Shown in pieces: positions 1 through 58,581 of a stretch of 64,000 nucleotides of DNA. The first letter of the stretch is position 1, and every line of letters starts with the position of its first letter. The stretch comes from Schmidtea nova (taxonomy: Eukaryota): assembly GCA_044892505.1 (NCBI GenBank), contig CM097882.1:19964001-20028000 (forward strand). The letters run 5' to 3'. The notes under the pieces were generated by a model, which saw nothing but the letters and a program-made list of their open reading frames with translations, had not been told where the DNA came from and did not search any database. The translations under genes were made by a program, and so were the position numbers.

Positions 1-3000
1 AATGCTAAGTAGCGGAAAAGATATGAAAGCTTTGCTAACAAGCGAAAAAGAAAGAATTGATAAAGAAAAGCATCGAGAATTAGAAAAGATCAGTATGGAA
101 TATTCAACTGACGCGCAACACTTGACTTTGGATGAAGCAATTGAAAAAGGTCTTGTAGACACAATGCGAGGAACGATACGAGATCCTATTTCTGGAAAAG
201 AAATTTCATTACAAGAAGCAATTGCAAAAGGAATAATCGACGCGGAAAATAGCGCAATATATGATGCAGAGAAAGGACAAACTGTGTCTCTTTCTGAAAT
301 GCTAAGGAGCGGAAAAGATATAAAAGCTTTGCTAACAAGCGAAAAAGAAAGAATTGATAAAGAAAAGCATGGAGAATTAGAAAAGATCAGTATGGAATAT
401 TCAACTGACGCGCAACACTTGACTTTGGATGAAGCAATTGAAAAAGGTCTTGTAGACACAATGCGAGGAACGATACGAGATCCTATTTCTGGAAAAGAAA
501 TTTCATTACAAGAAGCAATTGCAAAAGGAATAATCGACGCGGAAAATAGCGCAATATATGATGCAGAGAAAGGACAAACTGTGTCTCTTTCTGAAATGCT
601 AAGTAGCGGAAAAGATATGAAAGCTTTGCTAACAAGCGAAAAAGAAAGAATTGATAAAGAAAAGCATGGAGAATTAGAAAAGATCAGTATGGAATATTCA
701 ACTGGCGCGCAACACTTGACTTTGGATGAAGCCATTGAAAGAGGTCTTGTAGACACAATGCGAGGAACGATACGAGATCCTATTTCTGGAAAAGAAATTT
801 CATTACAAGAAGCAATTGCAAAAGGAATAATCGACGCGGAAAATAGCGCAATATATGATGCAGAGAAAGGACAAACTGTGTCTCTTTCTGAAATGCTAAG
901 TAGCGGAAAAGATATGAAAGCTTTGCTAACAAGCGAAAAAGAAAGAATTGATAAAGAAAAGCATGGAGAATTAGAAAAGATCAGTATGGAATATTCAACT
1001 GACGCGCAACACTTGACTTTGGATGAAGCAATTGAAAGAGGTCTTGTAGACACAATGCGAGGAACGATACGAGATCCTATTTCTGGAAAAGAAATTTCAT
1101 TACAAGAAGCAATTGCAAAAGGAATAATCGACGCGGAAAATAGCGCAATATATGATGCAGAGAAAGGACAAACTGTGTCTCTTTCTGAAATGCTAAGTAG
1201 CGGAAAAGATATGAAAGCTTTGCTAACAAGCGAAAAAGAAAGAATTGATAAAGAAAAGCATGGAGAATTAGAAAAGATCAGTATGGAATATTCAACTGAT
1301 GCGCAACACTTGACTTTGGATGAAGCAATTGAAAGAGGTCTTGTAGACACAATGCGAGGAACGATACGAGATCCTATTTCTGGAAAAGAAATTTCATTAC
1401 AAGAAGCAATTGCAAAAGGAATAATCGACGCGGAAAATAGCGCAATATATGATGCAGAGAAAGGACAAACTGTGTCTCTTTCTGAAATGCTAAGTAGCGG
1501 AAAAGATATGAAAGCTTTGCTAACAAGCGAAAAAGAAATAATTGTGAAAGAAAAGCATGGAGAATTAGAAAAGATCAGTATGGAATATTCAACTGACGCG
1601 CAACACTTGACTTTGGATGAAGCAATTGAAAAAGGTCTTGTAGACACAATGCGAGGAACGATACGAGATCCTATTTCTGGAAAAGAAATTTCATTACAAG
1701 AAGCAATTGCAAAAGGAATAATCGACGCGGAAAATAGCGCAATATATGATGCAGAGAAAGGACAAACTGTGTCTCTTTCTGAAATGCTAAGTAGCGGAAA
1801 AGATATGAAAGCTTTGCTAACAAGCGAAAAAGAAAGAATTGATAAAGAAAAGCATGGAGAATTAGAAAAGATCAGTATGGAATATTCAACTGACGCGCAA
1901 CACTTGACTTTGGATGAAGCCATTGAAAGAGGTCTTGTAGGCACAATGCGAGGAACGATACGAGATCCTATTTCTGGAAAAGAAATTTCATTACAAGAAG
2001 CAATTGCAAAAGGAATAATCGACGCGGAAAATAGCGCAATATATGATGCAGAGAAAGGACAAACTGTGTCTCTTTCTGAAATGCTAAGTAGCGGAAAAGA
2101 TATGAAAGCTTTGCTAACAAGCGAAAAAGAAAGAATTGATAAAGAAAAGCATGGAGAATTAGAAAAGATCAGTATGGAATATTCAACTGATGCGCAACAC
2201 TTGACTTTGGATGAAGCAATTGAAAGAGGTCTTGTAGACACAATGCGAGGAACGATACGAGATCCTATTTCTGGAAAAGAAATTTCATTACAAGAAGCAA
2301 TTGCAAAAGGAATAATCGACGCGGAAAATAGCGCAATATATGATGCAGAGAAAGGACAAACTGTGTCTCTTTCTGAAATGCTAAGTAGCGGAAAAGATAT
2401 GAAAGCTTTGCTAACAAGCGAAAAAGAAAGAATTGATAAAGAAAAGCATGGAGAATTAGAAAAGATCAGTATGGAATATTCAACTGATGCGCAACACTTG
2501 ACTTTGGATGAAGCAATTGAAAGAGGTCTTGTAGACACAATGCGAGGAACGATACGAGATCCTATTTCTGGAAAAGAAATTTCATTACAAGAAGCAATTG
2601 CAAAAGGAATAATCGACGCGGAAAATAGCGCAATATATGATGCAGAGAAAGGACAAACTGTGTCTCTTTCTGAAATGCTAAGTAGCGGAAAAGATATGAA
2701 AGCTTTGCTAACAAGCGAAAAAGAAAGAATTGATAAAGAAAAGCATGGAGAATTAGAAAAGATCAGTATGGAATATTCAACTGATGCGCAACACTTGACT
2801 TTGGATGAAGCCATTGAAAGAGGTCTTGTAGACACAATGCGAGGAACGATACGAGATCCTATTTCTGGAAAAGAAATTTCATTACAAGAAGCAATTGCAA
2901 AAGGAATAATCGACGCGGAAAATAGCGCAATATATGATGCAGAGAAAGGACAAACTGTGTCTCTTTCTGAAATGCTAAGTAGCGGAAAAGATATGAAAGC

Positions 3001-6000
3001 TTTGCTAACAAGCGAAAAAGAAAGAATTGATAAAGAAAAGCATGGAGAATTAGAAAAGATCAGTATGGAATATTCAACTGATGCGCAACACTTGACTTTG
3101 GATGAAGCAATTGAAAGAGGTCTTGTAGACACAATGCGAGGAACGATACGAGATCCTATTTCTGGAAAAGAAATTTCATTACAAGAAGCAATTGCAAAAG
3201 GAATAATCGACGCGGAAAATAGCGCAATATATGATGCAGAGAAAGGACAAACTGTGTCTCTTTCTGAAATGCTAAGTAGCGGAAAAGATATGAAAGCTTT
3301 GCTAACAAGCGAAAAAGAAAGAATTGATAAAGAAAAGCATGGAGAATTAGAAAAGATCAGTATGGAATATTCAACTGACGCGCAACACTTGACTTTGGAT
3401 GAAGTAATTGAAAAAGGTCTTGTAGACACAATGCGAGGAACGATACGAGATCCTATTTCTGGAAAAGAAATTTCATTACAAGAAGCAATTGCAAAAGGAA
3501 TAATCGACGCGGAAAATAGCGCAATATATGATGCAGAGAAAGGACAAACTGTGTCTCTTTCTGAAATGCTAAGTAGCGGAAAAGATATGAAAGCTTTGCT
3601 AACAAGCGAAAAAGAAAGAATTGATAAAGAAAAGCATGGAGAATTAGAAAAGATCAGTATGGAATATTCAACTGACGCGCAACACTTGACTTTGGATGAA
3701 GCAATTGAAAAAGGTCTTGTAGACACAATGCGAGGAACGATACGAGATCCTATTTCTGGAAAAGAAATTTCATTACAAGAAGCAATTGCAAAAGGAATAA
3801 TCGACGCGGAAAATAGCGCAATATATGATGCAGAGAAAGGACAAACTGTGTCTCTTTCTGAAATGCTAAGTAGCGGAAAAGATATGAAAGCTTTGCTAAC
3901 AAGCGAAAAAGAAAGAATTGATAAAGAAAAGCATGGAGAATTAGAAAAGATCAGTATGGAATATTCAACTGACGCGCAACACTTGACTTTGGATGAAGCC
4001 ATTGAAAGAGGTCTTGTAGGCACAATGCGAGGAACGATACGAGATCCTATTTCTGGAAAAGAAATTTCATTACAAGAAGCAATTGCAAAAGGAATAATCG
4101 ACGCGGAAAATAGCGCAATATATGATGCAGAGAAAGGACAAACTGTGTCTCTTTCTGAAATGCTAAGTAGCGGAAAAGATATGAAAGCTTTGCTAACAAG
4201 CGAAAAAGAAAGAATTGATAAAGAAAAGCATGGAGAATTAGAAAAGATCAGTATGGAATATTCAACTGATGCGCAACACTTGACTTTGGATGAAGCAATT
4301 GAAAGAGGTCTTGTAGACACAATGCGAGGAACGATACGAGATCCTATTTCTGGAAAAGAAATTTCATTACAAGAAGCAATTGCAAAAGGAATAATCGACG
4401 CGGAAAATAGCGCAATATATGATGCAGAGAAAGGACAAACTGTGTCTCTTTCTGAAATGCTAAGTAGCGGAAAAGATATGAAAGCTTTGCTAACAAGCGA
4501 AAAAGAAAGAATTGATAAAGAAAAGCATCGAGAATTAGAAAAGATCAGTATGGAATATTCAACTGACGCGCAACACTTGACTTTGGATGAAGCAATTGAA
4601 AAAGGTCTTGTAGACACAATGCGAGGAACGATACGAGATCCTATTTCTGGAAAAGAAATTTCATTACAAGAAGCAATTGCAAAAGGAATAATCGACGCGG
4701 AAAATAGCGCAATATATGATGCAGAGAAAGGACAAACTGTGTCTCTTTCTGAAATGCTAAGGAGCGGAAAAGATATAAAAGCTTTGCTAACAAGCGAAAA
4801 AGAAAGAATTGATAAAGAAAAGCATGGAGAATTAGAAAAGATCAGTATGGAATATTCAACTGACGCGCAACACTTGACTTTGGATGAAGCAATTGAAAAA
4901 GGTCTTGTAGACACAATGCGAGGAACGATACGAGATCCTATTTCTGGAAAAGAAATTTCATTACAAGAAGCAATTGCAAAAGGAATAATCGACGCGGAAA
5001 ATAGCGCAATATATGATGCAGAGAAAGGACAAACTGTGTCTCTTTCTGAAATGCTAAGGAGCGGAAAAGATATGAAAGCTTTGCTAACAAGCGAAAAAGA
5101 AAGAATTGATAAAGAAAAGCATGGAGAATTAGAAAAGATCAATATGGAATATTCAACTGATGCGCAACACTTCACTTTGGATGAAGCAATTGAAAGAGGT
5201 CTTGTAGACACAATGCGAGGAACGATACGAGATCCTATTTCTGGAAAAGAAATTTCATTACAAGAAGCAATTGCAAAAGGAATAATCGACGCGGAAAATA
5301 GCGCAATATATGATGCAGAGAAAGGACAAACTGTGTCTCTTTCTGAAATGCTAAGTAGCGGAAAAGATATGAAAGCTTTGCTAACAAGCGAAAAAGAAAG
5401 AATTGATAAAGAAAAGCATGGAGAATTAGAAAAGATCAGTATGGAATATTCAACTGATGCGCAACACTTCACTTTGGATGAAGCAATTGAAAGAGGTCTT
5501 GTAGACACAATGCGAGGAACGATACGAGATCCTATTTCTGGAAAAGAAATTTCATTACAAGAAGCAATTGCAAAAGGAATAATCGACGCGGAAAATAGCG
5601 CAATATATGATGCAGAGAAAGGACAAACTGTGTCTCTTTCTGAAATGCTAAGGAGCGGAAAAGATATGAAAGCTTTGCTAACAAGCGAAAAAGAAAGAAT
5701 TGATAAAGAAAAGCATGGAGAATTAGAAAAGATCAGTATGGAATATTCAACTGACGCGCAACACTTGACTTTGGATGAAGCAATTGAAAGAGGTCTTGTA
5801 GACACAATGCGAGGAACGATACGAGATCCTATTTCTGGAAAAGAAATTTCATTACAAGAAGCAATTGCAAAAGGAATAATCGACGCGGAAAATAGCGCAA
5901 TATATGATGCAGAGAAAGGACAAACTGTGTCTCTTTCTGAAATGCTAAGTAGCGGAAAAGATATGAAAGCTTTGCTAACAAGCGAAAAAGAAAGAATTGA

Positions 6001-9000
6001 TAAAGAAAAGCATGGAGAATTAGAAAAGATCAGTATGGAATATTCAACTGGCGCGCAACACTTGACTTTGGATGAAGCCATTGAAAGAGGTCTTGTAGAC
6101 ACAATGCGAGGAACGATACGAGATCCTATTTCTGGAAAAGAAATTTCATTACAAGAAGCAATTGCAAAAGGAATAATCGACGCGGAAAATAGCGCAATAT
6201 ATGATGCAGAGAAAGGACAAACTGTGTCTCTTTCTGAAATGCTAAGTAGCCGAAAAGATATGAAAGCTTTGCTAACAAGCGAAAAAGAAAGAATTGATAA
6301 AGAAAAGCATGGAGAATTAGAAAAGATCAGTATGGAATATTCAACTGACGCGCAACACTTGACTTTGGATGAAGCAATTGAAAGAGGTCTTGTAGACACA
6401 ATGCGAGGAACGATACGAGATCCTATTTCTGGAAAAGAAATTTCATTACAAGAAGCAATTGCAAAAGGAATAATCGACGCGGAAAATAGCGCAATATATG
6501 ATGCAGAGAAAGGACAAACTGTGTCTCTTTCTGAAATGCTAAGTAGCGGAAAAGATATGAAAGCTTTGCTAACAAGCGAAAAAGAAAGAATTGATAAAGA
6601 AAAGCATGGAGAATTAGAAAAGATCAGTATGGAATATTCAACTGATGCGCAACACTTGACTTTGGATGAAGCAATTGAAAGAGGTCTTGTAGACACAATG
6701 CGAGGAACGATACGAGATCCTATTTCTGGAAAAGAAATTTCATTACAAGAAGCAATTGCAAAAGGAATAATCGACGCGGAAAATAGCGCAATATATGATG
6801 CAGAGAAAGGACAAACTGTGTCTCTTTCTGAAATGCTAAGTAGCGGAAAAGATATGAAAGCTTTGCTAACAAGCGAAAAAGAAAGAATTGATAAAGAAAA
6901 GCATGGAGAATTAGAAAAGATCAGTATGGAATATTCAACTGATGCGCAACACTTGACTTTGGATGAAGCAATTGAAAGAGGTCTTGTAGACACAATGCGA
7001 GGAACGATACGAGATCCTATTTCTGGAAAAGAAATTTCATTACAAGAAGCAATTGCAAAAGGAATAATCGACGCGGAAAATAGCGCAATATATGATGCAG
7101 AGAAAGGACAAACTGTGTCTCTTTCTGAAATGCTAAGTAGCGGAAAAGATATGAAAGCTTTGCTAACAAGCGAAAAAGAAAGAATTGATAAAGAAAAGCA
7201 TGGAGAATTAGAAAAGATCAGTATGGAATATTCAACTGACGCGCAACACTTGACTTTGGATGAAGCAATTGAAAAAGGTCTTGTAGACACAATGCGAGGA
7301 ACGATACGAGATCCTATTTCTGGAAAAGAAATTTCATTACAAGAAGCAATTGCAAAAGGAATAATCGACGCAGAAAATAGCGCAATATATGATGCAGAGA
7401 AAGGACAAACTGTGTCTCTTTCTGAAATGCTAAGTAGCGGAAAAGATATGAAAGCTTTGCTAACAAGCGAAAAAGAAAGAATTGATAAAGAAAAGCATGG
7501 AGAATTAGAAAAGATCAGTATGGAATATTCAACTGACGCGCAACACTTGACTTTGGATGAAGCCATTGAAAGAGGTCTTGTAGACACAATGCGAGGAACG
7601 ATACGAGATCCTATTTCTGGAAAAGAAATTTCATTACAAGAAGCAATTGCAAAAGGAATAATCGACGCGGAAAATAGCGCAATATATGATGCAGAGAAAG
7701 GACAAACTGTGTCTCTTTCTGAAATGCTAAGTAGCGGAAAAGATATGAAAGCTTTGCTAACAAGCGAAAAAGAAAGAATTGATAAAGAAAAGCATGGAGA
7801 ATTAGAAAAGATCAGTATGGAATGTTCAACTGACGCGCAACACTTGACTTTGGATGAAGCAATTGAAAGAGGTCTTGTAGACACAATGCGAGGAACGATA
7901 CGAGATCCAATTTCTGGAAAAGAAATTTCATTACAAGAAGCAATTGCAAAAGGAATAATCGACGCAGAAAATAGCGCAATATATGATGCAGAGAAAGGAC
8001 AAACTGTGTCTCTTTCTGAAATGCTAAGGAGCGGAAAAGATATGAAAGCTTTGCTAATAAGCGAAAAAGAAAGAATTGATAAAGAAAAGCATGGAGAATT
8101 AGAAAAGATCAGTATGGAATATTCAACTGATGCGCAACACTTGACTTTGGATGAAGCAATTGAAAGAGGTCTTGTAGACACAATGCGAGGAACGATACGA
8201 GATCCTATTTCTGGAAAAGAAATTTCATTACAAGAAGCAATTGCAAAAGGAATAATCGACGCGGAAAATAGCGCAATATATGATGCAGAGAAAGGACAAA
8301 CTGTGTCTCTTTCTGAAATGCTAAGGAGTGGAAAAGATATGAAAGCTTTGCTAACAAGCGAAAAAGAAAGAATTGATAAAGAAAAGCATGGAGAATTAGA
8401 AAAGATCAGTATGGAATATTCAACTGACGCGCAACACTTGACTTTAGATGAAGCAATTGAAAGAGGTCTTGTAGACACAATGCGAGGAACGATACGAGAT
8501 CCTATTTCTGGAAAAGAAATTTCATTACAAGAAGCAATTGCAAAAGGAATAATCGACGCGGAAAATAGCGCAATATATGATGCAGGGAAAGGACAAACTG
8601 TGTCTCTTTCTGAAATACTAAGGAGCGGAAAAGATATGAAAGCTTTGCTAACAAGCGAAAAAGAAAGAATTGATAAAGAAAAGCATGGAGAATTAGAAAA
8701 GATCAGTATGGAATATTCAACTGATGCGCAACACTTGACTTTGGATGAAGCAATTGAAAGAGGTCTTGTAGACACAATGCGAGGAACGATACGAGATCCT
8801 ATTTCTGGAAAAGAAATTTCATTACAAGAAGCAATTGCAAAAGGAATAATCGACGCGGAAAATAGCGCAATATATGATGCAGAGAAAGGACAAACTGTGT
8901 CTCTTTCTGAAATGTTAAGGAGCGGAAAAGATATGAAAGCTTTGCTAACAAGCGAAAAAGAAAGAATTGATAAAGAAAAGCATGGAGAATTAGAAAAGAT

Positions 9001-12000
9001 CAGTATGGAATATTCAACTGACGCGCAACACTTGACTTTAGATGAAGCCATTGAAAGAGGTCTTGTAGACACAATGCGAGGAACGATACGAGATCCTATT
9101 TCTGGAAAAGAAATTTCATTACAAGAAGCAATTGCAAAAGGAATAATCGACGCGGAAAATAGCGCAATATATGATGCAGAGAAAGGACAAACTGTGTCTC
9201 TTTCTGAAATACTAAGGAGCGGAAAAGATATGAAAGCTTTGCTAACAAGCGAAAAAGAAAGAATTGATAAAGAAAAGCATGGAGAATTAGAAAAGATCAG
9301 TATGGAATATTCAACTGACGCGCAACACTTGACTTTGGATGAAGCAATTGAAAGAGGTCTTGTAGACACAATGCGAGGAACGATACGAGATCCTATTTCT
9401 GGAAAAGAAATTTCATTACAAGAAGCAATTGCAAAAGGAATAATCGACGCGGAAAATAGCGCAATATATGATGCAGAGAAAAGACAAACTGTGTCTCTTT
9501 CTGAAATGCTAAGTAGCGGAAAAGATATGAAAGCTTTGCTAACAAGCGAAAAAGAAAGAATTGATAAAGAGAAGCATGGAGAATTAGAAAAGATCAGTAT
9601 GGAATGTTCAACTGACGCGCAACACTTGACTTTGGATGAAGCAATTGAAAGAGGTCTTGTAGACACAATGCGAGGAACGATACGAGATCCAATTTCTGGA
9701 AAAGAAATTTCATTACAAGAAGCAATTGCAAAAGGAATAATCGACGCGGAAAATAGCGCAATATATGATGCAGAGAAAGGACAAACTGTGTCTCTTTCTG
9801 AAATGCCAAGGAGCAGAAAAGATATGAAAGCTTTGCTAACAAGCGAAAAAGAAAGAATTGATAAAGAAAAGCATGGAGAATTAGAAAAGATCAGTATGGA
9901 ATATTCAACTGACGCGCAACACTTGACTTTGGATGAAGCAATTGAAAGAGGTCTTGTAGACACAATGCGAGGAACGATACGAGATCCTATTTCTGGAAAA
10001 GAAATTTCATTACAAGAAGCAATTGCAAAAGGAATAATCGACGCGGAAAATAGCGCAATATATGATGCAGAGAAAGGACAAACTGTGTCTCTTTCTGAAA
10101 TGCTAAGGAGCGGAAAAGATATGAAAGCTTTGCTAAAAAGCGAAAAAGAAAGAATTGATAAAGAAAAGCATGGAGAATTAGAAAAGATCAGTATGGAATA
10201 TTCAACTGACGCGCAACACTTGACTTTAGATGAAGCAATTGAAAGAGGTCTTGTAGACACAATGCGAGGAACGATACGAGATCCTATTTCTGGAAAAGAA
10301 ATTTCATTACAAGAAGCAATTGCAAAAGGAATAATCGACGCGGAAAATAGCGCAATATATGATGCAGAGAAAGGACAAACTGTGTCTCTTTCTGAAATGC
10401 TAAGGAGCGGAAAAGATATGAAAGCTTTGCTAACAAGCGAAAAAGAAAGAATTGATAAAGAAAAGCATAGAGAATTAGAAAAGATCAGTATGGAATATTC
10501 AACTGACTCGCAACACTTGACTTTAGATGAAGCAATTGAAAGAGGTCTTGTAGACACAATGCGAAGAACGATACGAGATCCTATTTCTGGAAAAGAAATT
10601 TCATTACAAGAAGCAATTGCAAAAGGAATAATCGACGCGGAAAATAGCGCAATATATGATGCAGAGAAAGGACAAACTGTGTCTCTTTCTGAAATGCTAA
10701 GGAGCGGAAAAGATATGAAAGCTTTGCTAACAAGCGAAAAAGAAAGAATTGATAAAGAAAAGCATAGAGAATTAGAAAAGATCAGTATGGAATATTCAAC
10801 TGACGCGCAACACTTGACTTTGGATGAAGCAATTGAAAGAGGTCTTGTAGACACAATGCGAGGAACGATACGAGATCCAATTTCTGGAAAAGAAATTTCA
10901 TTACAAGAAGCAATTGCAAAAGGAATAATCGACGCGGAAAATAGCGCAATATATGATGCAGAGAAAGGACAAACTGTGTCTCTTTCTGAAATGCTAAGGA
11001 GCAGAAAAGATATGAAAGCTTTGCTAACAAGCGAAAAAGAAAGAATTGATAAAGAAAAGCATGGAGAATTAGAAAAGATCAGTATGGAATATTCAACTGA
11101 CGCGCAACACTTGACTTTGGATGAAGCAATTGAAAGAGGTCTTGTAGACACAATGCGAGGAACGATACGAGATCCTATTTCTGGAAAAGAAATTTCATTA
11201 CAAGAAGCAATTGCAAAAGGAATAATCGACGCGGAAAATAGCGCAATATATGATGCAGAGAAAGGACAAACTGTGTCTCTTTCTGAAATGCTAAGGAGCG
11301 GAAAAGATATGAAAGCTTTGCTAAAAAGCGAAAAAGAAAGAATTGATAAAGAAAAGCATGGAGAATTAGAAAAGATCAGTATGGAATATTCAACTGACGC
11401 GCAACACTTGACTTTAGATGAAGCAATTGAAAGAGGTCTTGTAGACACAATGCGAGGAACGATACGAGATCCTATTTCTGGAAAAGAAATTTCATTACAA
11501 GAAGCAATTGCAAAAGGAATAATCGACGCGGAAAATAGCGCAATATATGATGCAGAGAAAGGACAAACTGTGTCTCTTTCTGAAATGCTAAGGAGCGGAA
11601 AAGATATGAAAGCTTTGCTAACAAGCGAAAAAGAAAGAATTGATAAAGAAAAGCATAGAGAATTAGAAAAGATCAGTATGGAATATTCAACTGACTCGCA
11701 ACACTTGACTTTAGATGAAGCAATTGAAAGAGGTCTTGTAGACACAATGCGAAGAACGATACGAGATCCTATTTCTGGAAAAGAAATTTCATTACAAGAA
11801 GAAATTGCAAAAGGAATAATCGACGCGGAAAATAGCGCAATATATGATGCAGAGAAAGGACAAACTGTGTCTCTTTCTGAAATGCTAAGGAGCGGAAAAG
11901 ATATGAAAGCTTTGCTAACAAGCGAAAAAGAAAGAATTGATAAAGAAAAGCATAGAGAATTAGAAAAGATCAGTATGGAATATTCAGCTGACGCGCAACA

Positions 12001-33000: not shown

Positions 33001-36000
33001 GCTAACAAGCGAAAAAGAAAGAATTGATAAAGAAAAGCATGGAGAATTAGAAAAGATCAGTATGGAATATTCAACTGACGCGCAACACTTGACTTTGGAT
33101 GAAGCAATTGAAAGAGGTCTTGTAGACACAATGCGAGGAACGATACGAGATTCTATTTCTGGAAAAGAAATTTCATTACAAGAAGCAATTGCAAAAGGAA
33201 TAATCGACGCGGAAAATAGCGCAATATATGATGCAGAGAAAGGACAAACTCTGACTCTTTCTGAAATGCTAAAGAGCGGAAAAGATATGAAAGCTTTGCT
33301 AACAAGCGAAAAAGAAAGAATTGATAAAGAAAAGCATGGAGAATTAGAAAAGATCAGTATGGAATTTTCAACTGACGCACAACACTTGACTTTGGATGAA
33401 GCAATTGAAAGAGGTCTTGTAGACACAATGCGAGGAACGATACGAGATCCTATTTCTGGAAAAGAAATTTCATTACAAGAAGCAATTGCAAAAGGAATAA
33501 TCGACGCGGAAAATAGCGCAATATATGATGCAGAGAAAGGACAAACTGTGTCTCTTTCTGAAATGCTAAGGAGCGGAAAAGATATGAAAGCTTTGCTAAC
33601 AAGCGAAAAAGAAAGAATTGATAAAGAAAAGCATGGAGAATTAGAAAAGATCAGTATGGAATATTCAACTGACGCGCAACACTTGACTTTGGATGAAGCA
33701 ATTGAAAGAGGTCTTGTAGACACAATGCGAAGAACGATACGAGATCCTATTTCTGGAAAAGAAATTTCATTACAAGAAGCAATTGCAAAAGGAATAATCG
33801 ACGCGGAAAATAGCGCAATATATGATGCAGAGAAAGGACAAACTGTGTCTCTTTCTGAAATACTAAGGAACGGAAAAGATATGAAAGCTTTGCTAACAAG
33901 CGAAAAAGAAAGAATTGATAAAGAAAAGCATGGAGAATTAGAAAAGATCAGTATGGAATATTCAACTGACGCGCAACACTTGACTTTGGATGAAGCAATT
34001 GAAAGAGGTCTTGTAGACACAATGCGAGGAACGATACGAGATCCTATTTCTGGAAAAGAAATTTCATTACAAGAAGCAATTGCAAAAGGAATAATCGACG
34101 CGGAAAATAGCGCAATATATGATGCAGAGAAAGGACAAACTGTGTCTCTTTCTGAAATGCTAAGGAGCGGAAAAGATATGAAAGCTTTGCTAACAAGCGA
34201 AAAAGAAAGAATTGATAAAGAAAAGCATGGAGAATTAGAAAAGATCAGTATGGAATATTCAACTGACGCGCAACACTTGACTTTGGATGAAGCAATTGAA
34301 AGAGGTCTTGTAGACACAATGCGAAGAACGATACGAGATCCTATTTCTGGAAAAGAAATTTCATTACAAGAAGCAATTGCAAAAGGAATAATCGACGCGG
34401 AAAATAGCGCAATATATGATGCAGAGAAAGGACAAACTGTGTCTCTTTCTGAAATACTAAGGAGCGGAAAAGATATGAAAGCTTTGCTAACAAGCGAAAA
34501 AGAAAGAATTGATAAAGAAAAGCATGGAGAATTAGAAAAGATCAGTATGGAATATTCAACTGACGCGCAACACTTGACTTTGGATGAAGCAATTGAAAGA
34601 GGTCTTGTAGACACAATGCGAGGAACGATACGAGATCCTATTTCTGGAAAAGAAATTTCATTACAAGAAGCAATTGCAAAAGGAATAATCGACGCGGAAA
34701 ATAGCGCAATATATGATGCAGAGAAAGGACAAACTGTGTCTCTTTCTGAAATGCTAAGGAGCGGAAAAGATATGAAAGCTTTGCTAACAAGCGAAAAAGA
34801 AAGAATTGATAAAGAGAAGCATGGAGAATTAGAAAAGATCAGTATGGAATTTTCATCTGACGCACAACACTTGACTTTGGATGAAGCAATTGAAAGAGGT
34901 CTTGTAGACACAATGCGAGGAACGATACGAGATCCTATTTCTGGAAAAGAAATTTCATTACAAGAAGCAATTGCAAAAGGAATAATCGAGGCGGAAAATA
35001 GCGCAATATATGATGCAGAGAAAGGACAAACTGTGTCTCTTTCTGAAATGCTAAGGAGCGGAAAAGATATGAAAGCTTTGCTAACAAGCGAAAAAGAAAG
35101 AATTGATAAAGAAAAGCATGGAGAATTAGAAAAGATCAGTATGGAATATTCAACTGACGCGCAACACTTGACTTTGGATGAAGCAATTGAAAGAGGTCTT
35201 GTAGACACAATGCGAAGAACGATACGAGATCCTATTTCTGGAAAAGAAATTTCATTACAAGAAGCAATTGCAAAAGGAATAATCGACGCGGAAAATAGCG
35301 CAATATATGATGCAGAGAAAGGACAAACTGTGTCTCTTTCTGAAATGCTAAGGAGCGGAAAAGATATGAAAGCTTTGCTAACAAGCGAAAAAGAAAGAAT
35401 TGATAAAGAAAAGCATGGAGAATTAGAAAAGATCAGTATGGAATATTCAACTGATGCGCAACACTTGACTTTGGATGAAGCAATTGAAAGAGGTCTTGTA
35501 GACACAATGCGAGGAACGATACGAGATCCTATTTCTGGAAAAGAAATTTCATTACAAGAAGCAATGTCAAAAGGAATAATCGACGCGGAAAATAGCGCAA
35601 TATATGATGCAGAGAAAGGACAAACTGTGTCTCTTTCTGAAATACTAAGGAGCGGAAAAGATATGAAAGCTTTGCTAACAAGCGAAAATGAAAGAATTGA
35701 TAAAGAAAAGCATGGAGAATTAGAAAAGATCAGTATGGAATATTCAACTGACGCGCAACACTTGACTTTGGATGAAGCAATTGAAAGAGGTCTTGTAGAC
35801 ACAATGCGAGGAACGATACGAGATCCTATTTCTGGAAAAGAAATTTCATTACAAGAAGCAATTGCAAAAGGAATAATCGACGCGGAAAATAGCGCAATAT
35901 ATGATGCAGAGAAAGGACAAACTGTGACTCTTTCTGAAATGCTAAGGAGCGGAAAAGATATGAAAGCTTTGCTAACAAGCGAAAAAGAAAGAATTGATAA

Positions 36001-39000
36001 AGAAAAGCATGGAGAATTAGAAAAGTTAAGTATGGAATATTTAACTGACGTGCAACACTTGACTTTGGATGAAGCAATTGAAAGAGGTCTTGTAGACACA
36101 ATGCGAGGAACGATGCGAGATCCTATTTCTGGAAAAGAAATTTCATTACAAGAAGCAATGTCAAAAGGAATAATCGACGCGGAAAATAGCGCAATATATG
36201 ATGCAGAGAAAGGACAAACTGTGTCTCTTTCTGAAATACTAAGGAGCGGAAAAGATATGAAAGCTTTGCTAAGAAGCGAAAAAGAAAGAATTGATAAAGA
36301 AAAGCATGGAGAATTAGAAAAGATCAGTATGGAATATTCAACTGACGCGCAACACTTGACTTTGGATGAAGCAATTGAAAGAGGTCTTGTAGACACAATG
36401 CGAGGAACGATACGAGATTCTATTTCTGGAAAAGAAATTTCATTACAAGAAGCAATTGCAAAAGGAATAATCGACGCGGAAAATAGCGCAATATATGATG
36501 CAGAGAAAGGACAATCTCTGACTCTTTCTGAAATGCTAAAGAGCGGAAAAGATATGAAAGCTTTGCTAACAAGCGAAAAAGAAAGAATTGATAAAGAAAA
36601 GCATGGAGAATTAGAAAAGATCAGTATGGAATTTTCAACTGACGCACAACACTTGACTTTGGATGAAGCAATTGAAAGAGGTCTTGTAGACACAATGCGA
36701 GGAACGATACGAGATCCTATTTCTGGAAAAGAAATTTCATTACAAGAAGCAATTGCAAAAGGAATAATCGACGCGGAAAATAGCGCAATATATGATGCAG
36801 AGAAAGGACAAACTGTGTCTCTTTCTGAAATGCTAAGGAGCGGAAAAGATATGAAAGCTTTGCTAACAAGCGAAAAAGAAAGAATTGATAAAGAAAAGCA
36901 TGGAGAATTAGAAAAGATCAGTATGGAATATTCAACTGACGCGCAACACTTGACTTTGGATGAAGCAATTGAAAGAGGTCTTGTAGACACAATGCGAAGA
37001 ACGATACGAGATCCTATTTCTGGAAAAGAAATTTCATTACAAGAAGCAATTGCAAAAGGAATAATCGACGCGGAAAATAGCGCAATATATGATGCAGAGA
37101 AAGGACAAACTGTGTCTCTTTCTGAAATACTAAGGAACGGAAAAGATATGAAAGCTTTGCTAACAAGCGAAAAAGAAAGAATTGATAAAGAAAAGCATGG
37201 AGAATTAGAAAAGATCAGTATGGAATATTCAACTGACGCGCAACACTTGACTTTGGATGAAGCAATTGAAAGAGGTCTTGTAGACACAATGCGAGGAACG
37301 ATACGAGATCCTATTTCTGGAAAAGAAATTTCATTACAAGAAGCAATTGCAAAAGGAATAATCGACGCGGAAAATAGCGCAATATATGATGCAGAGAAAG
37401 GACAAACTGTGTCTCTTTCTGAAATGCTAAGGAGCGGAAAAGATATGAAAGCTTTGCTAACAAGCGAAAAAGAAAGAATTGATAAAGAAAAGCATGGAGA
37501 ATTAGAAAAGATCAGTATGGAATATTCAACTGACGCGCAACACTTGACTTTGGATGAAGCAATTGAAAGAGGTCTTGTAGACACAATGCGAAGAACGATA
37601 CGAGATCCTATTTCTGGAAAAGAAATTTCATTACAAGAAGCAATTGCAAAAGGAATAATCGACGCGGAAAATAGCGCAATATATGATGCAGAGAAAGGAC
37701 AAACTGTGTCTCTTTCTGAAATACTAAGGAGCGGAAAAGATATGAAAGCTTTGCTAACAAGCGAAAAAGAAAGAATTGATAAAGAAAAGCATGGAGAATT
37801 AGAAAAGATCAGTATGGAATATTCAACTGACGCGCAACACTTGACTTTGGATGAAGCAATTGAAAGAGGTCTTGTAGACACAATGCGAAGAACGATACGA
37901 GATCCTATTTCTGGAAAAGAAATTTCATTACAAGAAGCAATTGCAAAAGGAATAATCGACGCGGAAAATAGCGCAATATATGATGCAGAGAAAGGACAAA
38001 CTGTGTCTCTTTCTGAAATACTAAGGAACGGAAAAGATATGAAAGCTTTGCTAACAAGCGAAAAAGAAAGAATTGATAAAGAAAAGCATGGAGAATTAGA
38101 AAAGATCAGTATGGAATATTCAACTGACGCGCAACACTTGACTTTGGATGAAGCAATTGAAAGAGGTCTTGTAGACACAATGCGAGGAACGATACGAGAT
38201 CCTATTTCTGGAAAAGAAATTTCATTACAAGAAGCAATTGCAAAAGGAATAATCGACGCGGAAAATAGCGCAATATATGATGCAGAGAAAGGACAAACTG
38301 TGTCTCTTTCTGAAATGCTAAGGAGCGGAAAAGATATGAAAGCTTTGCTAACAAGCGAAAAAGAAAGAATTGATAAAGAAAAGCATGGAGAATTAGAAAA
38401 GATCAGTATGGAATATTCAACTGACGCGCAACACTTGACTTTGGATGAAGCAATTGAAAGAGGTCTTGTAGACACAATGCGAAGAACGATACGAGATCCT
38501 ATTTCTGGAAAAGAAATTTCATTACAAGAAGCAATTGCAAAAGGAATAATCGACGCGGAAAATAGCGCAATATATGATGCAGAGAAAGGACAAACTGTGT
38601 CTCTTTCTGAAATACTAAGGAGCGGAAAAGATATGAAAGCTTTGCTAACAAGCGAAAAAGAAAGAATTGATAAAGAAAAGCATGGAGAATTAGAAAAGAT
38701 CAGTATGGAATATTCAACTGACGCGCAACACTTGACTTTGGATGAAGCAATTGAAAGAGGTCTTGTAGACACAATGCGAAGAACGATACGAGATCCTATT
38801 TCTGGAAAAGAAATTTCATTACAAGAAGCAATTGCAAAAGGAATAATCGACGCGGAAAATAGCGCAATATATGATGCAGAGAAAGGACAAACTGTGTCTC
38901 TTTCTGAAATGCTAAGGAGCGGAAAAGATATGAAAGCTTTGCTAACAAGCGAAAAAGAAAGAATTGATAAAGAAAAGCATGGAGAATTAGAAAAGATCAG

Positions 39001-42000
39001 TATGGAATATTCAACTGATGCGCAACACTTGACTTTGGATGAAGCAATTGAAAGAGGTCTTGTAGACACAATGCGAGGAACGATACGAGATCCTATTTCT
39101 GGAAAAGAAATTTCATTACAAGAAGCAATTGGAAAAGGAATAATCGACGCGGAAAATAGCGCAATATATGATGCAGAGAAAGGACAAACTGTGTCTCTTT
39201 CTGAAATGCTAAGTAGCGGAAAAGATATGAAAGCTTTGCTAACAAGCGAAAAAGAAAGAATTGATAAAGAAAAGCATGGAGAATTAGGAAAGATCAGTAT
39301 GGAATATTCAACTGATGCGCAACACTTGACTTTGGATGAAGCATTTGAAAGAGGTCTTGTAGACACAATGCGAGGAACGATACGAGATCCTATTTCTGGA
39401 AAAGAAATTTCATTACAAGAAGCAATTGCAAAAGGAATAATCGACGCGGAAAATAGCGCAATATATGATGCAGAGAAAGGACAAACTGTGTCTCTTTCTG
39501 AAATACTAAGGAGCGGAAAAGATATGAAAGCTTTGCTAACAAGCGAAAAAGAAAGAATTGATAAAGAAAAGCATGGAGAATTAGAAAAGATCAGTATGGA
39601 ATATTCAACTGATGCGCAACACTTGACTTTGGATGAAGCAATTGAAAGAGGTCCTGTAGACACAATGCGAGGAACGATACGAGATCCTATTTCTGGAAAA
39701 GAAATTTCATTACAAGAAGAAATTGCAAAAGGAATAATCGACGCGGAAAATAGCGCAATATATGATGCAGAGAAAGGACAAACTGTGTCTCTTTCTGAAA
39801 TGCTAAGGAGCGGAAAAGATATGAAAGCTTTGCTAACAAGCGAAAAAGAAAGAATTGATAAAGAAAAGCATGGAGAATTAGAAAAGATCAGTATGGAATA
39901 TTCAACTGATGCGCAACACTTGACTTTGGATGAAGCAATTGAAAGAGGTCTTGTAGACACAATGCGAGGAACGATACGAGATCCTATTTCTGGAAAAGAA
40001 ATTTCATTACAAGAAGCAATTGCAAAAGGAATAATCGACGCGGAAAATAGCGCAATATATGATGCAGAGAAAGGACAAACTGTGTCTCTTTCTGAAATGC
40101 TAAGTAGCGGAAAAGATATGAAAGCTTTGCTAACAAGCGAAAAAGAAAGAATTGATAAAGAGAAGCATGGAGAATTAGAAAAGATCAGTATGGAATATTC
40201 AACTGACGCGCAACACTTGACTTTGGATGAAGCAATTGAAAGAGGTCTTGTAGACACAATGCGAGGAACGATACGAGATCCTATTTCTGGAAAAGAAATT
40301 TCATTACAAGAAGCAATTGCAAAAGGAATAATCGAAGCGGAAAATAGCGCAATATATGATGCAGAGAAAGGACAAACTGTGTCTCTTTCTGAAATGCTAA
40401 GTAGCGGAAAAGATCTGAAAGCTTTGCTAACAAGCGAAAAAGAAAGAATTGATAAAGAGAAGCATGGAGAATTAGAAAAGATCAGTATGGAATGTTCAAC
40501 TGACGCGCAACACTTGACTTTGGATGAAGCAATTGAAAGAGGTCCTGTAGACACAATGCGAGGAACGATACGAGATCCTATTTCTGGAAAAGAAATTTCA
40601 TTACAAGAAGCAATTGCAAAAGGATTAATCGACTCGGAAAATAGCGCAATATATGATGCAGAGAAAGGACAAACTGTGTCTCTTTCTGAAATGCTAAGGA
40701 GCGGAAAAGATATGAAAGCTTTGCTAACAAGCGAAAAAGAAAGAATTGATAAAGAAAAGCATGGAGAATTAGAAAAGATCAGTATGGAATATTCAACTGA
40801 CGCGACACACTTGACTTTGGACGAAGCAATTGAAAGAGGTCTTGTAGACACAATGCGAGGAACGATACGAGATCCTATTTCTGGAAAAGAAATTTCATTA
40901 CAAGAAGCAATTGCAAAAGGAAAAATCGACGCGGAAAATAGCGCAATATATGATGCAGAGAAAGGACAAACTGTGTCTCTTTCTGAAATGCTAAGTAGCG
41001 GAAAAGATATGAAAGCTTTGCTAACAAGCGAAAAAGAAAGAATTGATAAAGAAAAGCATGGAGAATTAGAAAAGATCAGTATGGAATATTCAACTGACGC
41101 GCAACACTTGACTTTGGACGAAGCAATTGAAAGAGGTCTTGTAGACACAATGCGAGGAACGATACGAGATCCTATTTCTGGAAAAGAAATTTCATTACAA
41201 GAAGCAATTGCAAAAGGAATAATCGACTCGGAAAATAGCGCAATATATGATGCAGGGAAAGGACAAACTGTGTCTCTTTCTGAAATGATTTGTAGCGGAA
41301 AAGATATGAAAGCTTTGCTAACAAGCGAAAAAGAAAGAATTGATAAAGAAAAGCATGGAGAATTAGAAAAGATCAGTATGGAATATTCAACTGACGCGCA
41401 ACACTTGACTTTGGATGAAGCAATTGAAAGAGGTCTTGTAGACACAATGCGAGGAACGATACGAGATCCTATTTCTGGAAAAGAAATTTCATTACAAGAA
41501 GCAATTGCAAAAGGAATAATCGACGCGGAAAATAGCGCAATATATGATGCAGAGAAAGGACAAACTGTGTCTCTTTCTGAAATGCTAAGGAGCGGAAAAG
41601 ATATGAAAGCTTTGCTAACAAGCGAAAAAGAAAGAATTGATAAAGAAAAGCATGGAGAATTAGAAAAGATCAGTATGGAATATTCAACTGACGCGCAACA
41701 CTTGACTTTGGATGAAGCAATTGAAAGAGGTCTTGTAGACAAAATACGAGGAACGATACGAGATCCTATTTCTGGAAAAGAAATTTCAATACAAGAAGCA
41801 ATAGGAAAAGGAGTAATCGACGCGGAAAATAGCGCAATATATGATGCAGAGAAAGGACAAACTGTGTCTCTTTCTGAAATGATTTGTAGCGGAAAAGATA
41901 TGAAAGCTTTGCTAACAAGCGAAAAAGAAAGAATTGATAAAGAAAAGCATGGAGAATTAGAAAAGATCAGTATGGAATATTCAACTGACGCGCAACACTT

Positions 42001-42785
42001 GACTTTGGATGAAGCAATTGAAAGAGGTCTTGTAGACACAATGCGAGGAACGATACGAGATCCTATTTCTGGAAAAGAAATTTCATTACAAGAAGCAATT
42101 GCAAAAGGAATAATCGACGCGGAAAATAGCGCAATATATGATGCAGAGAAAGGACAAACTGTGTCTCTTTCTGAAATGCTAAGGAGCGGAAAAGATATGA
42201 AAGCTTTGCTAACAAGCGAAAAAGAAAGAATTGATAAAGAAAAGCATGGAGAATTAGAAAAGATCAGTATGGAATATTCAACTGACGCGCAACACTTGAC
42301 TTTGGATGAAGCAATTGAAAGAGGTCTTGTAGTTACAATACGAGGAACGATACGAGATCCTATTTCTGGAAAAGAAATTTCAATACAAGAAGCAATAGGA
42401 AAAGGAGTAATCGACGCGGAAAATAGCGCAATATATGATGCAGAGAAAGGACAAACTGTGTCTCTTTTTGAAATGCTAAGTAGCGGAAAAGATATGAAAG
42501 CTTTGCTAACTAGCGAAAAAGAAAGAATTGATAAAGAAAAGCATGGAGAATTAGAAAAGATCAGTATGGAATATTCAACTGACGCGCAACACTTGACTTT
42601 GGATGAAGCAATTGAAAGAGGTCTTGTAGACACAATGCGAGGAACGATACGAGATCCTATTTCTGGAAAAGAAATTTCAATACAAGAAGCAATAGGAAAA
42701 GGAGTAATCGACGCGGAAAATAGCGCAATATATGATGCAGAGAAAGGACAAACTGTGTCTCTTTCTGAAATGCTAAGGAGCGGAA
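1..42785 (+). repeat. Coding tandem array: 144 complete 297-bp (99-aa) units plus a short partial unit
   Basis: The ATG at 2 recurs at 42770 (offset 42768 = 144 x 297), so there is no net indel. Units differ only by scattered substitutions. Confidence 0.97.
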
Positions 42786-42934
42786 TGGATATTTGTTCTC
42801 ATCTTTTGAAATCTGAATTTTTTGAATATGACAATTTTGATAATTCTAATAACGCCTCAAATAATGAATCTAATATTCTATCAAATCTACATCATTTGTC
42901 ACATTTTGCAGAAGACTCTAATGCTCATTTTGAG
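1..42934 (+). CDS. Giant plakin-repeat exon (at least 42,934 nt; acceptor lies upstream of the window)
   Basis: ORF 2..42958 is open throughout. The repeats contain [13 protein letters not shown]...[22 protein letters not shown], a plectin/plakin-repeat signature. A strong donor GAG|GTAAGT lies at 42934/42935. The Met at 2 is an internal repeat Met, not a true start. Confidence 0.88.
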
Positions 42935-52413: not shown

Positions 52414-52682
52414 GTCTGCTTATATTTCCGAATCGGTAAATTATGATAAGCAGCCATCGGATCCGATTATTAGCTCTTCTTTTTAACACGTGACAGGCGA
52501 TAAGCAAAAAATTCATTTAAAATCACAACACTGATTAGTGTAAGGGTTCGCAACCCTGAGGAGGGGAATTCGAACCAGGGGTTTGTTGGATGATGTTATT
52601 TAAAATTACTAAAATTAGTTTTCAAGTTCCAAATCAGTAGGAGGCTATGAGCGGTCCAGATCCACTACCCCCATGTGTGTAT

Positions 52683-53072
52683 ATTACGTAATCGCTCGGA
52701 CTTTACATAGTACACATGATTACGCAATTCTCGGGTTTTACATAGCACACACGTTATTACGTAATATTTCTCGGCCTTTTACATAGCACACAAATTATGA
52801 TGTCATGATTACGTAATCGAGGTCAAAGGTCAAGGTCATTTCGAGGTCGAGGTCAAGGTCATTTTTTTTGTTTTAATTTAAATTTTTTGGCGCAATTTTT
52901 GAATTTTATTGCCGTTTGTTTAAATAAAGTAAATTAATAATTATTTTTTTTGGCGCAATTTTTGAATTTTACCGCATTTTTTTTTGAATTTTAGTTTAAA
53001 TTTTTTGTCGCAATTTTTTGAATTTAAGCGTCATTTTGTTTAATCAAAGTAAATTTTTAGCGCAATTTTCAA
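52683..53072. promoter_or_regulatory. Cluster of repeated TF-like motifs (ATTACGTAAT x3 plus ATTACGCAAT; AGGTCA/G x6; TTTGGCGC x2), probably part of a repetitive element
   Basis: ATTACG(T/C)AAT at 52683, 52719, 52756 and 52808, within ~37-50-bp repeats. Half-sites at 52820, 52827, 52833, 52844, 52850 and 52856. TTTGGCGC at 52886 and 52949. Function is not shown by the sequence. Confidence 0.45.
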
Positions 53073-55523: not shown

Positions 55524-55755
55524 AGGTGGGTCAAAGGTGATAGGTAAATGGTACTATATTATTACATGAGATGCGATGGGTGAAAATCGATAGGCGAATG
55601 ACGCTATCTTGGGATGTGATGGGACAAAGCTGATAGGTAAATGGTGTTATATTATTACATGGAATGCGATGGGTCAAAACTGATAAGCAAATGACACTAT
55701 CTTCTAACATGGGATGCGATGAGTCAAAACTGATAGAATAATGGCGGTATCATTG
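55524..55755 (+). repeat. Degenerate 43-50-bp tandem repeat, about 5 units (mirror ~62704-62935)
   Basis: Recurrent GATGGGTCAAA..TGATAGG.AAATG...TAT..T..ACATG..ATGC, with a related copy near 55335-55390. Confidence 0.75.
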
Positions 55756-58220: not shown

Positions 58221-58440
58221 ATTATGAAAGTGTACGGAAATATTGTGAAATGTATGTTCAAGTAAGAAGCTTTCAAACCTATCACAATTTGTGTCTGTTA
58301 CTGGATAAAACTGAAACATTGTGATAATGTAATTGATCAAAGATCATACCGGGTTATGTTAATGAATAATGTTGATTGTAGCAATAATAACTATATGTGT
58401 GAGTAATAAGCTTTGGCAGATAAAAACCATCACAAAAGAT

Positions 58441-58539: not shown

Positions 58540-58581
58540 GAAAGGTTCATTATTCACTTTAACAAATAATAAACATTTAAA

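What the first reader, a model, noticed from the sequence alone, without database searches (positions are those of the whole stretch)
1..42934. Spectraplakin with a >42.9-kb single coding exon of 144+ near-identical plakin-repeat units
Seen: one uninterrupted frame of at least 14,311 codons ending at a canonical donor and splicing in phase into spectrin-repeat exons. Known: Drosophila shot and vertebrate MACF1b/BPAG1b insert plakin repeats through one large alternative exon before the spectrin rod, and the well-known giant exons (titin, AHNAK, MUC16) are around 20 kb or less. Inference: this exon is about twice that size or more, and the array alone would add roughly 1.6 MDa. It looks like an epiplakin-style homogenised repeat array built inside a spectraplakin, possibly a very long or high-avidity cytolinker.
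Basis: partly seen in the sequence, partly recalled or inferred. Interest (0 to 1): 0.92.

Follow-up and report, generated by a model that had tools for sequence, protein, structure and literature searches.

The report
Giant homogenised plakin-repeat exon, flatworm spectraplakin
A very AT-rich animal genome (probably a planarian flatworm) holds an unbroken reading frame of at least 42.9 kb made of 144 almost identical copies of a 99-residue plakin-repeat module, inside a gene that resembles the cytoskeletal linker Short stop/MACF1; if translated it adds about 1.6 MDa, but no RNA or protein evidence could be obtained.

Summary
Window 1-42792 is a 297-bp tandem array of 144 units with no indel. 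One + frame is open for 14,311 codons up to a GAG|GTAAGT donor at 42934/42935. Each unit matches Pfam Plectin.

K-mer depth in four short-read DNA runs gives 107-161 copies relative to the unique flank, so the copy number is not inflated by assembly.

The unit is the ~99-residue module of invertebrate Shot/MACF1/dystonin. Those proteins have 7-35 near-full-length units that are 26-31% alike; here the units are about 98% alike. One close relative, a 1124-residue fragment, carries the same unit homogenised to its own consensus, which indicates concerted evolution.

The in-phase acceptor at 42989 opens an exon with a degenerate plakin unit, not spectrin. Spectrin-like exons follow, colinear with the scallop dystonin rod.

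- **Not shown:** transcription, the splice junction, the 5' end of the exon, and the head and tail domains of the gene.
- **Selection:** variants between units look neutral except that none creates a stop (6 expected).
- **Size claim:** overstated, because Chironomus BR1/BR2 exon 4 is about 35 kb.
- **Earlier scan notes:** unchecked notes report similar giant tandem-repeat ORFs elsewhere in this genome (64 kb or more; over 42.6 kb) and other plakin-family giants.

Verdict: a new variant of a known kind.

The parts
1..42792 (+). Tandem array of 144 units of 297 bp (99 codons each), about 98% alike, with no indels. It runs off the 5' end of the window.
   Evidence: 86 distinct DNA unit types, longest exact self-match 2,881 bp, and a 25-unit block duplication.
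2..42934 (+). Open reading frame of 14,311 codons, the putative single coding exon. Its 5' end is not in the window.
   Evidence: No variant between units creates a stop, against 6.0 expected. No strong internal donor: at most 5 of 9 against 8 of 9 for the flanking donors.
42785..42934 (+). Unique in-frame tail of about 50 codons after the last partial unit, ending at the donor.
42935..42988 (+). Predicted 54-nt phase-0 intron, GTAAGT...CAG, with an in-frame stop at 42956-42958.
   Evidence: No RNA support was obtained.
42989..43780 (+). Predicted exon of 264 codons, rich in Ser, Phe and Leu. Residues 138-227 (about 43400-43669) form a degenerate plakin unit. It ends at AAG|GTAAAT.
   Evidence: HMM built from alignment A1 gives E = 1.4e-10. 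No relatives in the databases. The frame is open for 306 codons.
44229..52446 (+). Series of helical, spectrin-like exons; exact borders are not established.
   Evidence: Pfam Spectrin hits below the cut-off, E = 5e-4 and 7e-4. tblastn: 48123-48578 matches scallop dystonin residues 4387-4549 (E = 5e-11) and 51333-52160 matches residues 4678-4926 (E = 1e-16). A crude in-frame exon chain is possible.
45543..46133 (.). High-copy dispersed repeat inside a predicted intron.
   Evidence: Depth 3,287-3,942 against about 43 in the flank in run X1.

Best explanation
This is a real, recently amplified and continually homogenised coding array inside the large plakin-repeat exon of a flatworm gene of the Shot/MACF1/dystonin (spectraplakin) type.

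Shown:
- The ancestral ~99-residue Shot-type module is built of 27-residue 'short' plakin motifs, each a beta-hairpin plus one short helix. In this lineage the last part of the module has become a charged helix of about 28 residues.
- The module has been multiplied to at least 144 copies. Nested block duplications of 25, 11 and 3-5 units point to unequal crossing-over or gene conversion.
- The same process keeps the copies about 98% identical within the lineage while the consensus drifts between lineages.
- The frame stays intact: no stops and no indels.

Inferred:
- The exon is spliced, at least in some isoforms, through the donor at 42934 to a plakin-like exon and then to the spectrin rod.
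- This inserts an acidic segment of about 1.6 MDa (net charge -7 per unit) between the head and the rod.
- The segment acts as a very long, multivalent spacer or tether, as proposed for the plakin-repeat isoforms of Drosophila Shot at epithelial junctions, with its length set by copy number.
For: - Array, register and frame.
- Pfam Plectin E = 7e-42. A profile of the units matches desmoplakin at E = 4e-23 and also envoplakin, plectin and periplakin.
- Relatives are invertebrate spectraplakins. Their plakin regions show the same unit spacing of 97-99 residues, including Drosophila shot, but their units are only 26-31% alike.
- The relative P0121 has 11 units that are 96% alike. Its consensus differs from this array's at 12 of 99 residues, mostly by conservative changes, and each difference is nearly fixed in both arrays.
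- 0 stop-creating variants among 96 distinct variants against 6.0 expected (Poisson P about 0.0025) and no indel.
- The antisense open frame shows no such deficit and has no Pfam match.
- Depth of unit unitigs over the unique flank is 107-161 in four runs from up to three samples. The same 31-mers occur 93-122 times in the window, a genome/window ratio of 0.91-1.58.
- 86 distinct unit types and a longest exact self-match of 2.9 kb, so accurate long reads could resolve the array, if such reads were used (the sequencing method is not known to me).
- In-phase donor and acceptor, with a degenerate plakin unit in the next exon.
- Downstream exons are colinear with the scallop dystonin rod, whose own plakin repeats end at residue 3833.
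- AlphaFold2 model, mean pLDDT 81: per unit, three short-helix-plus-hairpin motifs and one helix of about 28 residues.
- Precedent: the 10,497-nt shot plakin exon lies between the head and the spectrin repeats, and its isoforms sit at adherens junctions (PMC2173965).
Against: - There is no transcript or protein evidence. The four runs found are DNA, with contigs colinear through the predicted introns.
- Variants between units show a neutral ratio of replacement to silent changes (77:19 against 70.7:19.2 expected) and an even spread over codon positions. Amino-acid-level constraint on individual units is therefore not visible.
- The 5' end of the exon and the head of the gene are outside the window.
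- No EF-hand or GAR tail is seen. After 52446 the gene trace is lost among four N runs and a perfect inverted repeat that runs to the window's end, so the gene may be truncated or the local assembly imperfect.
- Pfam Spectrin hits are below the gathering score.
- The predicted fold does not superpose on solved plakin repeat domains: TM 0.1-0.2 and Z = 2.0.
- The acidic charge differs from the basic filament-binding groove of vertebrate plakin repeat domains (my own knowledge).
- The runs may come from the strain that was assembled.
Confidence: 0.68

Rival explanations
1. The array is real DNA but effectively non-coding. It would be a young satellite-like expansion of one plakin module inside what is used as an intron or an almost always skipped alternative exon, and the open frame survives only because the expansion is recent.
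For: Variants within the array have a neutral replacement-to-silent ratio and an even codon-position spread. In Drosophila tendon cells the plakin exon is treated as an intron (PMC2173965). No RNA evidence was obtained.
Against: No stop against 6.0 expected and no indel among 96 distinct variants in 42.8 kb. The other frames and the antisense strand carry stops at the expected rate. The relative's array keeps the frame over 11 units, with mostly conservative consensus changes. The unique tail stays in frame up to a strong donor.
Confidence: 0.17
2. The copy number, or the uninterrupted state, is an assembly artefact: the assembler looped through a shorter array.
For: A 25-unit block is duplicated nearly exactly. 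A perfect inverted repeat of at least 4.6 kb per arm and four N runs lie just downstream, which hints at a difficult region.
Against: The k-mer depth of unit unitigs relative to the flank is 107-161 in four runs and matches or exceeds the count of the same 31-mers in the window, ratio 0.91-1.58. There are 86 distinct unit types and no exact self-match above 2.9 kb. The duplicated blocks differ at a few units, as real duplications do.
Confidence: 0.08
3. The gene is not the canonical spectraplakin. It would be a lineage-specific paralogue, or a truncated inverted-duplicated copy, with plakin repeats and a short spectrin-like stretch but no microtubule-binding tail.
For: Unchecked scan notes report other giant plakin-family genes in the same genome (s1-356151, s1-381128). 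No EF-hand or GAR tail is in the window, and the gene trace stops before a perfect inverted repeat. Rod similarity is weak, about 25% identity.
Against: The unit type and its position before a dystonin-like rod are those of Shot-type spectraplakins. A full rod needs far more than the 11 kb left in the window, so its absence proves little.
Confidence: 0.3

Closest known systems
Drosophila Short stop (Shot) plakin-repeat exon and its invertebrate counterparts (MACF1/dystonin-like proteins of annelids, molluscs and arthropods)
   Same: One large exon of plakin repeats placed before the spectrin rod (PMC2173965). The ~97-99-residue module built of short plakin motifs is the same. Units share 22-32% identity with this array. 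The repeats are not organised as 4.5-repeat globular domains (PMC2173965).
   Different: The shot exon is 10,497 nt with 33 repeats. Relatives have 7-35 near-full-length units that are 26-31% alike. Here there are at least 144 units about 98% alike, in 42.9 kb or more. In this unit the last part of the module has turned into a charged helix.
Epiplakin (EPPK1)
   Same: A plakin-family protein dominated by repeated plakin modules in one exon, with repeat number varying between and probably within species (PMC8782857). From my own knowledge, its last copies are nearly identical.
   Different: Epiplakin is made only of canonical plakin repeat domains and its whole coding sequence is one exon (PMC8782857). 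Here the units are Shot-type short motifs and the exon is predicted to splice on to plakin-like and spectrin-like exons.
Giant tandem-repeat exons: Chironomus Balbiani ring BR1/BR2 exon 4 (~35 kb), spider AgSp1 (42,270-bp CDS in two exons), Drosophila 27.7-kb exon
   Same: Tens of kilobases of uninterrupted, homogenised coding repeats in one exon (PMC3028071, PMC6553539, PMC3563967).
   Different: Those encode secreted structural proteins. This one is a cytoskeletal repeat of a recognised family, and at 42.9 kb or more it is somewhat longer than any of them. Unchecked scan notes say this same genome has an ORF of 64 kb or more (s1-356147).
P0121 (UniParc UPI0005FF9CDE, 1124 residues, organism not shown)
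   Same: Same 99-residue unit, 86% identical, itself homogenised with units 96% alike.
   Different: Its consensus differs at 12 of 99 residues. It is only an 11-unit fragment, and its DNA and context could not be retrieved.

Membership tests
Pfam Plectin repeat (PF00681) | Sequence match above the curated gathering score | tested here: met
   141.4 bits against a cut-off of 20.5, E = 7e-42, 8 stretches in 4 units. A profile of the units matches desmoplakin, envoplakin, plectin and periplakin chains.
Canonical plakin repeat domain (desmoplakin A/B/C type) | 38-residue repeats (hairpin plus two helices) packed as about 4.5 repeats into one globular domain | tested here: not met
   The motif spacing is 27 residues, and desmoplakin needs insertions of about 11 residues per motif in the alignment. 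Foldseek ranks these domains first but with TM 0.1-0.2, and VIA-align gives Z = 2.0 over 53 residues.
Canonical plakin repeat domain (desmoplakin A/B/C type) | Basic groove that binds intermediate filaments (my own knowledge of the solved domains) | tested here: inconclusive
   Only the net charge was computed: -7 per unit and pI 4.7. Surface electrostatics were not modelled.
Shot-type plakin-repeat region of invertebrate spectraplakins | Modules of about 99 residues made of short plakin motifs, in a long uninterrupted run | tested here: met
   A unit HMM finds median spacings of 97-99 residues in Drosophila shot, Paralvinella and other proteins. Units align over their full length at 16-36% identity.
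Spectraplakin (Shot/MACF1/dystonin/VAB-10) | Plakin repeats followed by a spectrin-repeat rod in the same gene | tested here: inconclusive
   Colinear tblastn matches to the scallop dystonin rod, E = 5e-11 and 1e-16. Pfam Spectrin hits are below the cut-off. The exon linkage is predicted only.
Spectraplakin (Shot/MACF1/dystonin/VAB-10) | N-terminal calponin-homology actin-binding domain and SH3-containing plakin domain | not testable with these tools
Spectraplakin (Shot/MACF1/dystonin/VAB-10) | C-terminal EF-hands and GAR/GAS2 microtubule-binding domain | tested here: inconclusive
   No such frame was seen in my reading of the open frames of 42900-55000; these frames were not scanned for EF-hand or GAR domains. 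The rest of the window is N runs and an inverted repeat. A full rod would extend beyond the window.
Epiplakin | Whole coding sequence in a single exon, with plakin repeat domains only | tested here: not met
   The frame ends at a donor and continues in phase into further exons, including spectrin-like ones. The units are not canonical plakin repeat domains.

The most novel reading that the evidence does not exclude
The whole array is translated in a normal isoform. That would give a cytolinker of more than 2 MDa and perhaps micron length, whose length is set by a copy-number-variable run of more than 140 identical Shot-type modules. It would be the largest plakin-family protein and one of the longest coding exons described, and a natural system for asking how repeat number tunes the reach of a cytoskeletal tether in planarian epithelia, muscle attachments or adhesive organs.
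Probability: 0.4. Interest if true: 0.75.

Novelty: new variant of a known kind. Interest (0 to 1): 0.6.

Why it matters
Plakin-repeat isoforms of spectraplakins are the least understood forms of these proteins. In invertebrates their binding partners are unknown, and each module differs from the next.

- **A clean test case.** More than 140 identical modules would make a simple case for biochemistry and structural work on the Shot-type module.
- **Length and function.** If copy number varies between individuals, it offers a natural test of whether length matters.
- **Annotation.** In a planarian, RNAi and in situ hybridisation are routine, so the question can be tested directly. The locus also shows that automated annotation of long-read assemblies probably misses megadalton repeat genes, since no protein of this locus was found in the public sets searched.
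- **Limits.** Balbiani ring exon 4 is about 35 kb, and unchecked scan notes report even longer ORFs in this same genome.

Tried and rejected
- **Antisense gene.** The minus strand has open stretches of up to 22.8 kb. The antisense strand is A-poor, which makes stop codons rarer there. It carries stop variants at the expected rate (2 against 3.7) and has no Pfam match. Rejected.
- **Hidden introns in the unit.** The best internal donor scores 5 of 9, against 8 of 9 for the real flanking donors, and the unit is purine-rich without strong pyrimidine tracts. Unlikely, but not excluded without cDNA.
- **Exon 42989-43780 as non-coding.** It has no relatives in the databases, but it matches the plakin-unit HMM and is open for 306 codons. 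Kept as coding.
- **Transcription evidence.** My single run search, made with kind 'any', returned only four DNA runs, and no RNA test was possible afterwards.
- **Finding this genome's own proteins or a relative's DNA.** Exact look-ups of P0121 and of two window ORFs found nothing, so a between-species dN/dS could not be computed.
- **Rfam on 42800-64000.** No match.
- **Literature.** I found no paper on planarian spectraplakins or on this gene.
- **Exon chaining.** My simple exon-chaining script skipped several likely exons. It shows only that an in-frame chain is possible and is not a gene model.
Full report
**1. The observation**

Tandem Repeats Finder reports a single array at 1-42792, period 297 bp, 144.1 copies, 98% matches and 0% indels. 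Cut in register from base 2, all 144 units are exactly 297 bp and differ from the consensus at 3.4 positions on average. The + frame from base 2 has no stop until 42956-42958, so bases 2-42934 are 14,311 codons and the frame is still open at the window's first base. GAG|GTAAGT lies at 42934/42935. A 54-nt interval ends in ...ttttctcag|AAT at 42988/42989 and keeps phase 0. Four units give Pfam Plectin at E = 7e-42, two matches per unit. The description is therefore correct. The splice itself remains a prediction.

**2. Is the array real, and is it this long?**

- The four public runs that hold the locus are genomic DNA. Their contigs run colinearly through the predicted introns; for example, X1 record 2 covers 42756-45578 with no difference.
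- Unitigs from the unit have word depths of 6432 (X1), 1460 and 1317 (X2), 1318 (X3), and 1133 and 1351 (X4). The unique flank has 42.7, 9.06, 12.3 and about 9.6. The depth ratios are therefore 107-161.
- The same 31-mers occur 93-122 times in the window, so the genome holds 0.91-1.58 times what the window shows. That fits an array of about 144 units or somewhat more, part of it upstream of the window.
- The array is not featureless. It has 86 distinct unit types and a longest exact self-match of 2,881 bp. There is a 25-unit block duplication with a few differences, and nested repeats of 11 and 3-5 units. This is the pattern left by unequal crossing-over, and accurate long reads could resolve it; I do not know how the genome was sequenced.
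- Caveats: the runs may be of the assembled strain, and contig depth is a rough measure.

**3. Is it coding?**

- Among 96 distinct variants between units, 77 change the amino acid and 19 are silent. The observed mutation spectrum predicts 70.7 and 19.2, and codon positions are hit evenly at 33, 32 and 31. Constraint on single residues of single units is not visible.
- No variant creates a stop, against 6.0 expected (Poisson P about 0.0025), and there is no indel in 42.8 kb. The two other sense frames and the antisense frames carry stop variants at the expected rate.
- The antisense open stretches lie on an A-poor strand, where stop codons are rarer, and have no Pfam match.
- No internal donor scores above 5 of 9, against 8 of 9 for the two flanking donors.
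- One close relative exists in 1.8 billion representatives: P0121, 1124 residues, UniParc UPI0005FF9CDE. It is 11 copies of the same unit, 96% alike among themselves.
- Its consensus differs from this array's at 12 of 99 residues: R/K, D/N, M/I, K/S, H/Q, G/T, Q/H, I/M, R/K, M/L, K/R and T/S. Each difference is nearly fixed in both arrays. That is concerted evolution with mostly conservative replacement, and the frame is kept in both lineages.
- Its DNA could not be retrieved, so no dN/dS is available.

**4. What the unit is**

- Rotated to start at LTLDEA, the unit reads as 27 + 27 + 27 + 18 residues. This matches the scan note s1-385779.
- In an HMM alignment to desmoplakin, each motif lacks about 11 residues of the second helix of the canonical 38-residue repeat.
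- AlphaFold2 with a 50-row alignment (mean pLDDT 81) predicts, per unit, three short-helix-plus-beta-hairpin motifs at pLDDT about 88-92 and one helix of about 28 residues at lower confidence.
- Foldseek ranks solved plakin repeat domains first (5dzz, 1lm5, 4qmd, 1lm7, 4q28), but with TM-scores of only 0.1-0.2. VIA-align gives Z = 2.0.
- So the motif is plakin-like, but the model is not a globular 4.5-repeat domain. Röper and Brown reached the same conclusion for Shot (PMC2173965).

**5. The module is old; the amplification is new**

- A unit HMM finds the same module in invertebrate spectraplakins, with median spacings of 97-99 residues in Drosophila kikkawai shot, Paralvinella and several unnamed proteins.
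- There the module has four LxEAxxxG motifs. In this flatworm the third hairpin and the fourth motif are replaced by the charged helix.
- In those proteins units are 26-31% identical to each other. Here, and in P0121, they are 96-98% identical.
- Their plakin regions span about 1,500-6,500 residues. Two are single ORFs: 6,207 residues (P0002) and 4,924 residues (P0122, a 14.8-kb ORF on contig L001). The present array is at least 14,311 residues.

**6. Gene context**

- The exon after the predicted intron, 42989-43780, has no relatives in the databases. Its residues 138-227 match the plakin-unit HMM at E = 1.4e-10. The array is therefore followed by a divergent plakin unit, which ties the two exons to one protein.
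- Further exons between 44229 and 52446 are helical.
- 48123-48578 matches residues 4387-4549 of scallop dystonin (E = 5e-11) and 51333-52160 matches residues 4678-4926 (E = 1e-16). That protein's plakin repeats end at residue 3833, so the order is colinear.
- Pfam Spectrin hits are below the cut-off.
- After 52446 I read no further coding frame in the list of open frames. Four N runs and a perfect inverted repeat follow. Its arms are 54459-59092 and 59367-64000, with a 274-nt spacer, and the right arm is cut by the window's end.
- Head domains and the EF-hand/GAR tail are thus unseen, and membership in the spectraplakins is only partly tested.

**7. The organism**

Non-coding GC is 14-30%. 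Unchecked scan notes place planarian spliced leaders in this genome. I treat it as a probable planarian flatworm, unverified.

**8. How it most likely works**

- Shown: a Shot-type module was amplified and is kept homogeneous, with the frame protected.
- Inferred: the exon is included in at least some isoforms. It then inserts an acidic (net -7 per unit, pI 4.7), bead-and-helix chain of 1.585 MDa between the head and the rod. It would act as a long multivalent spacer or tether, by analogy with the Shot plakin-repeat isoforms at adherens junctions (PMC2173965).
- The acidic charge argues against the basic-groove mode of filament binding of vertebrate domains (my own knowledge).

**9. Comparison with known cases and novelty**

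- The shot exon is 10,497 nt (PMC2173965).
- The longest exons listed in 2013 were 17 kb in human and 27.7 kb in Drosophila (PMC3563967).
- AgSp1 has 42,270 bp of coding sequence, but in two exons (PMC6553539).
- BR1/BR2 exon 4 is about 35 kb (PMC3028071).
- Epiplakin is a single-exon protein made only of plakin repeat domains, with variable repeat number (PMC8782857).
- This exon would exceed all of these modestly. Unchecked scan notes report an ORF of 64 kb or more (s1-356147) and another exon of over 42.6 kb (s1-375987) in the same genome, so giant homogenised ORFs may be a habit of this genome.
- I class it as a new variant of a known kind: a Shot-type plakin exon taken to an extreme of copy number and homogeneity.

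**10. Verdict**

Confidence in a real, frame-protected coding array in a spectraplakin-type gene is about 0.68. Transcription, gene ends and function remain open.

Noticed in passing
window 54459-59092 and 59367-64000: Perfect (100%) inverted repeat with a 274-nt spacer. The right arm is cut by the window's end, so it may be longer. The arms are AT-rich and contain tandem sub-repeats (periods 15, 52, 73, 93, 98, 136, 146), which recalls foldback-type transposons. It could also be an assembly foldback or a mirror duplication that truncates the gene.
   Followed up: partly
window 45543-46133: Dispersed repeat in a predicted intron: contig depth 3,287-3,942 against about 43 in the flank in run X1, with many variant junctions and loose ends in all four runs.
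   Followed up: no
window 49105-49237, 50032-50219, 53149-53280, 53293-53423: Four N runs of 131-188 bases inside the downstream part of the gene. They interrupt any attempt at a full exon model.
   Followed up: no
L001 2581-17355 (Logan contig of SRR31406938): A single 14.8-kb ORF (P0122, 4,924 residues) made of Shot-type plakin modules in an unidentified organism. It contains a run of about ten units at an exact 89-90-residue spacing and some identical unit pairs, which suggests local amplification of the same kind on a smaller scale.
   Followed up: partly
window 42935-42958: If the 54-nt intron is retained, the frame stops 7 codons after the donor. The nearest AATAAA is at 44016. A plakin-repeat-terminated isoform like VAB-10A or BPAG1e is conceivable but unsupported.
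   Followed up: no
window 42989-43400: The first 137 residues of the exon after the array are rich in Ser, Phe, Leu and Pro and are encoded by T-rich DNA (AT skew -0.28). This is opposite in composition to the A-rich array, and there are no relatives in any database searched.
   Followed up: partly
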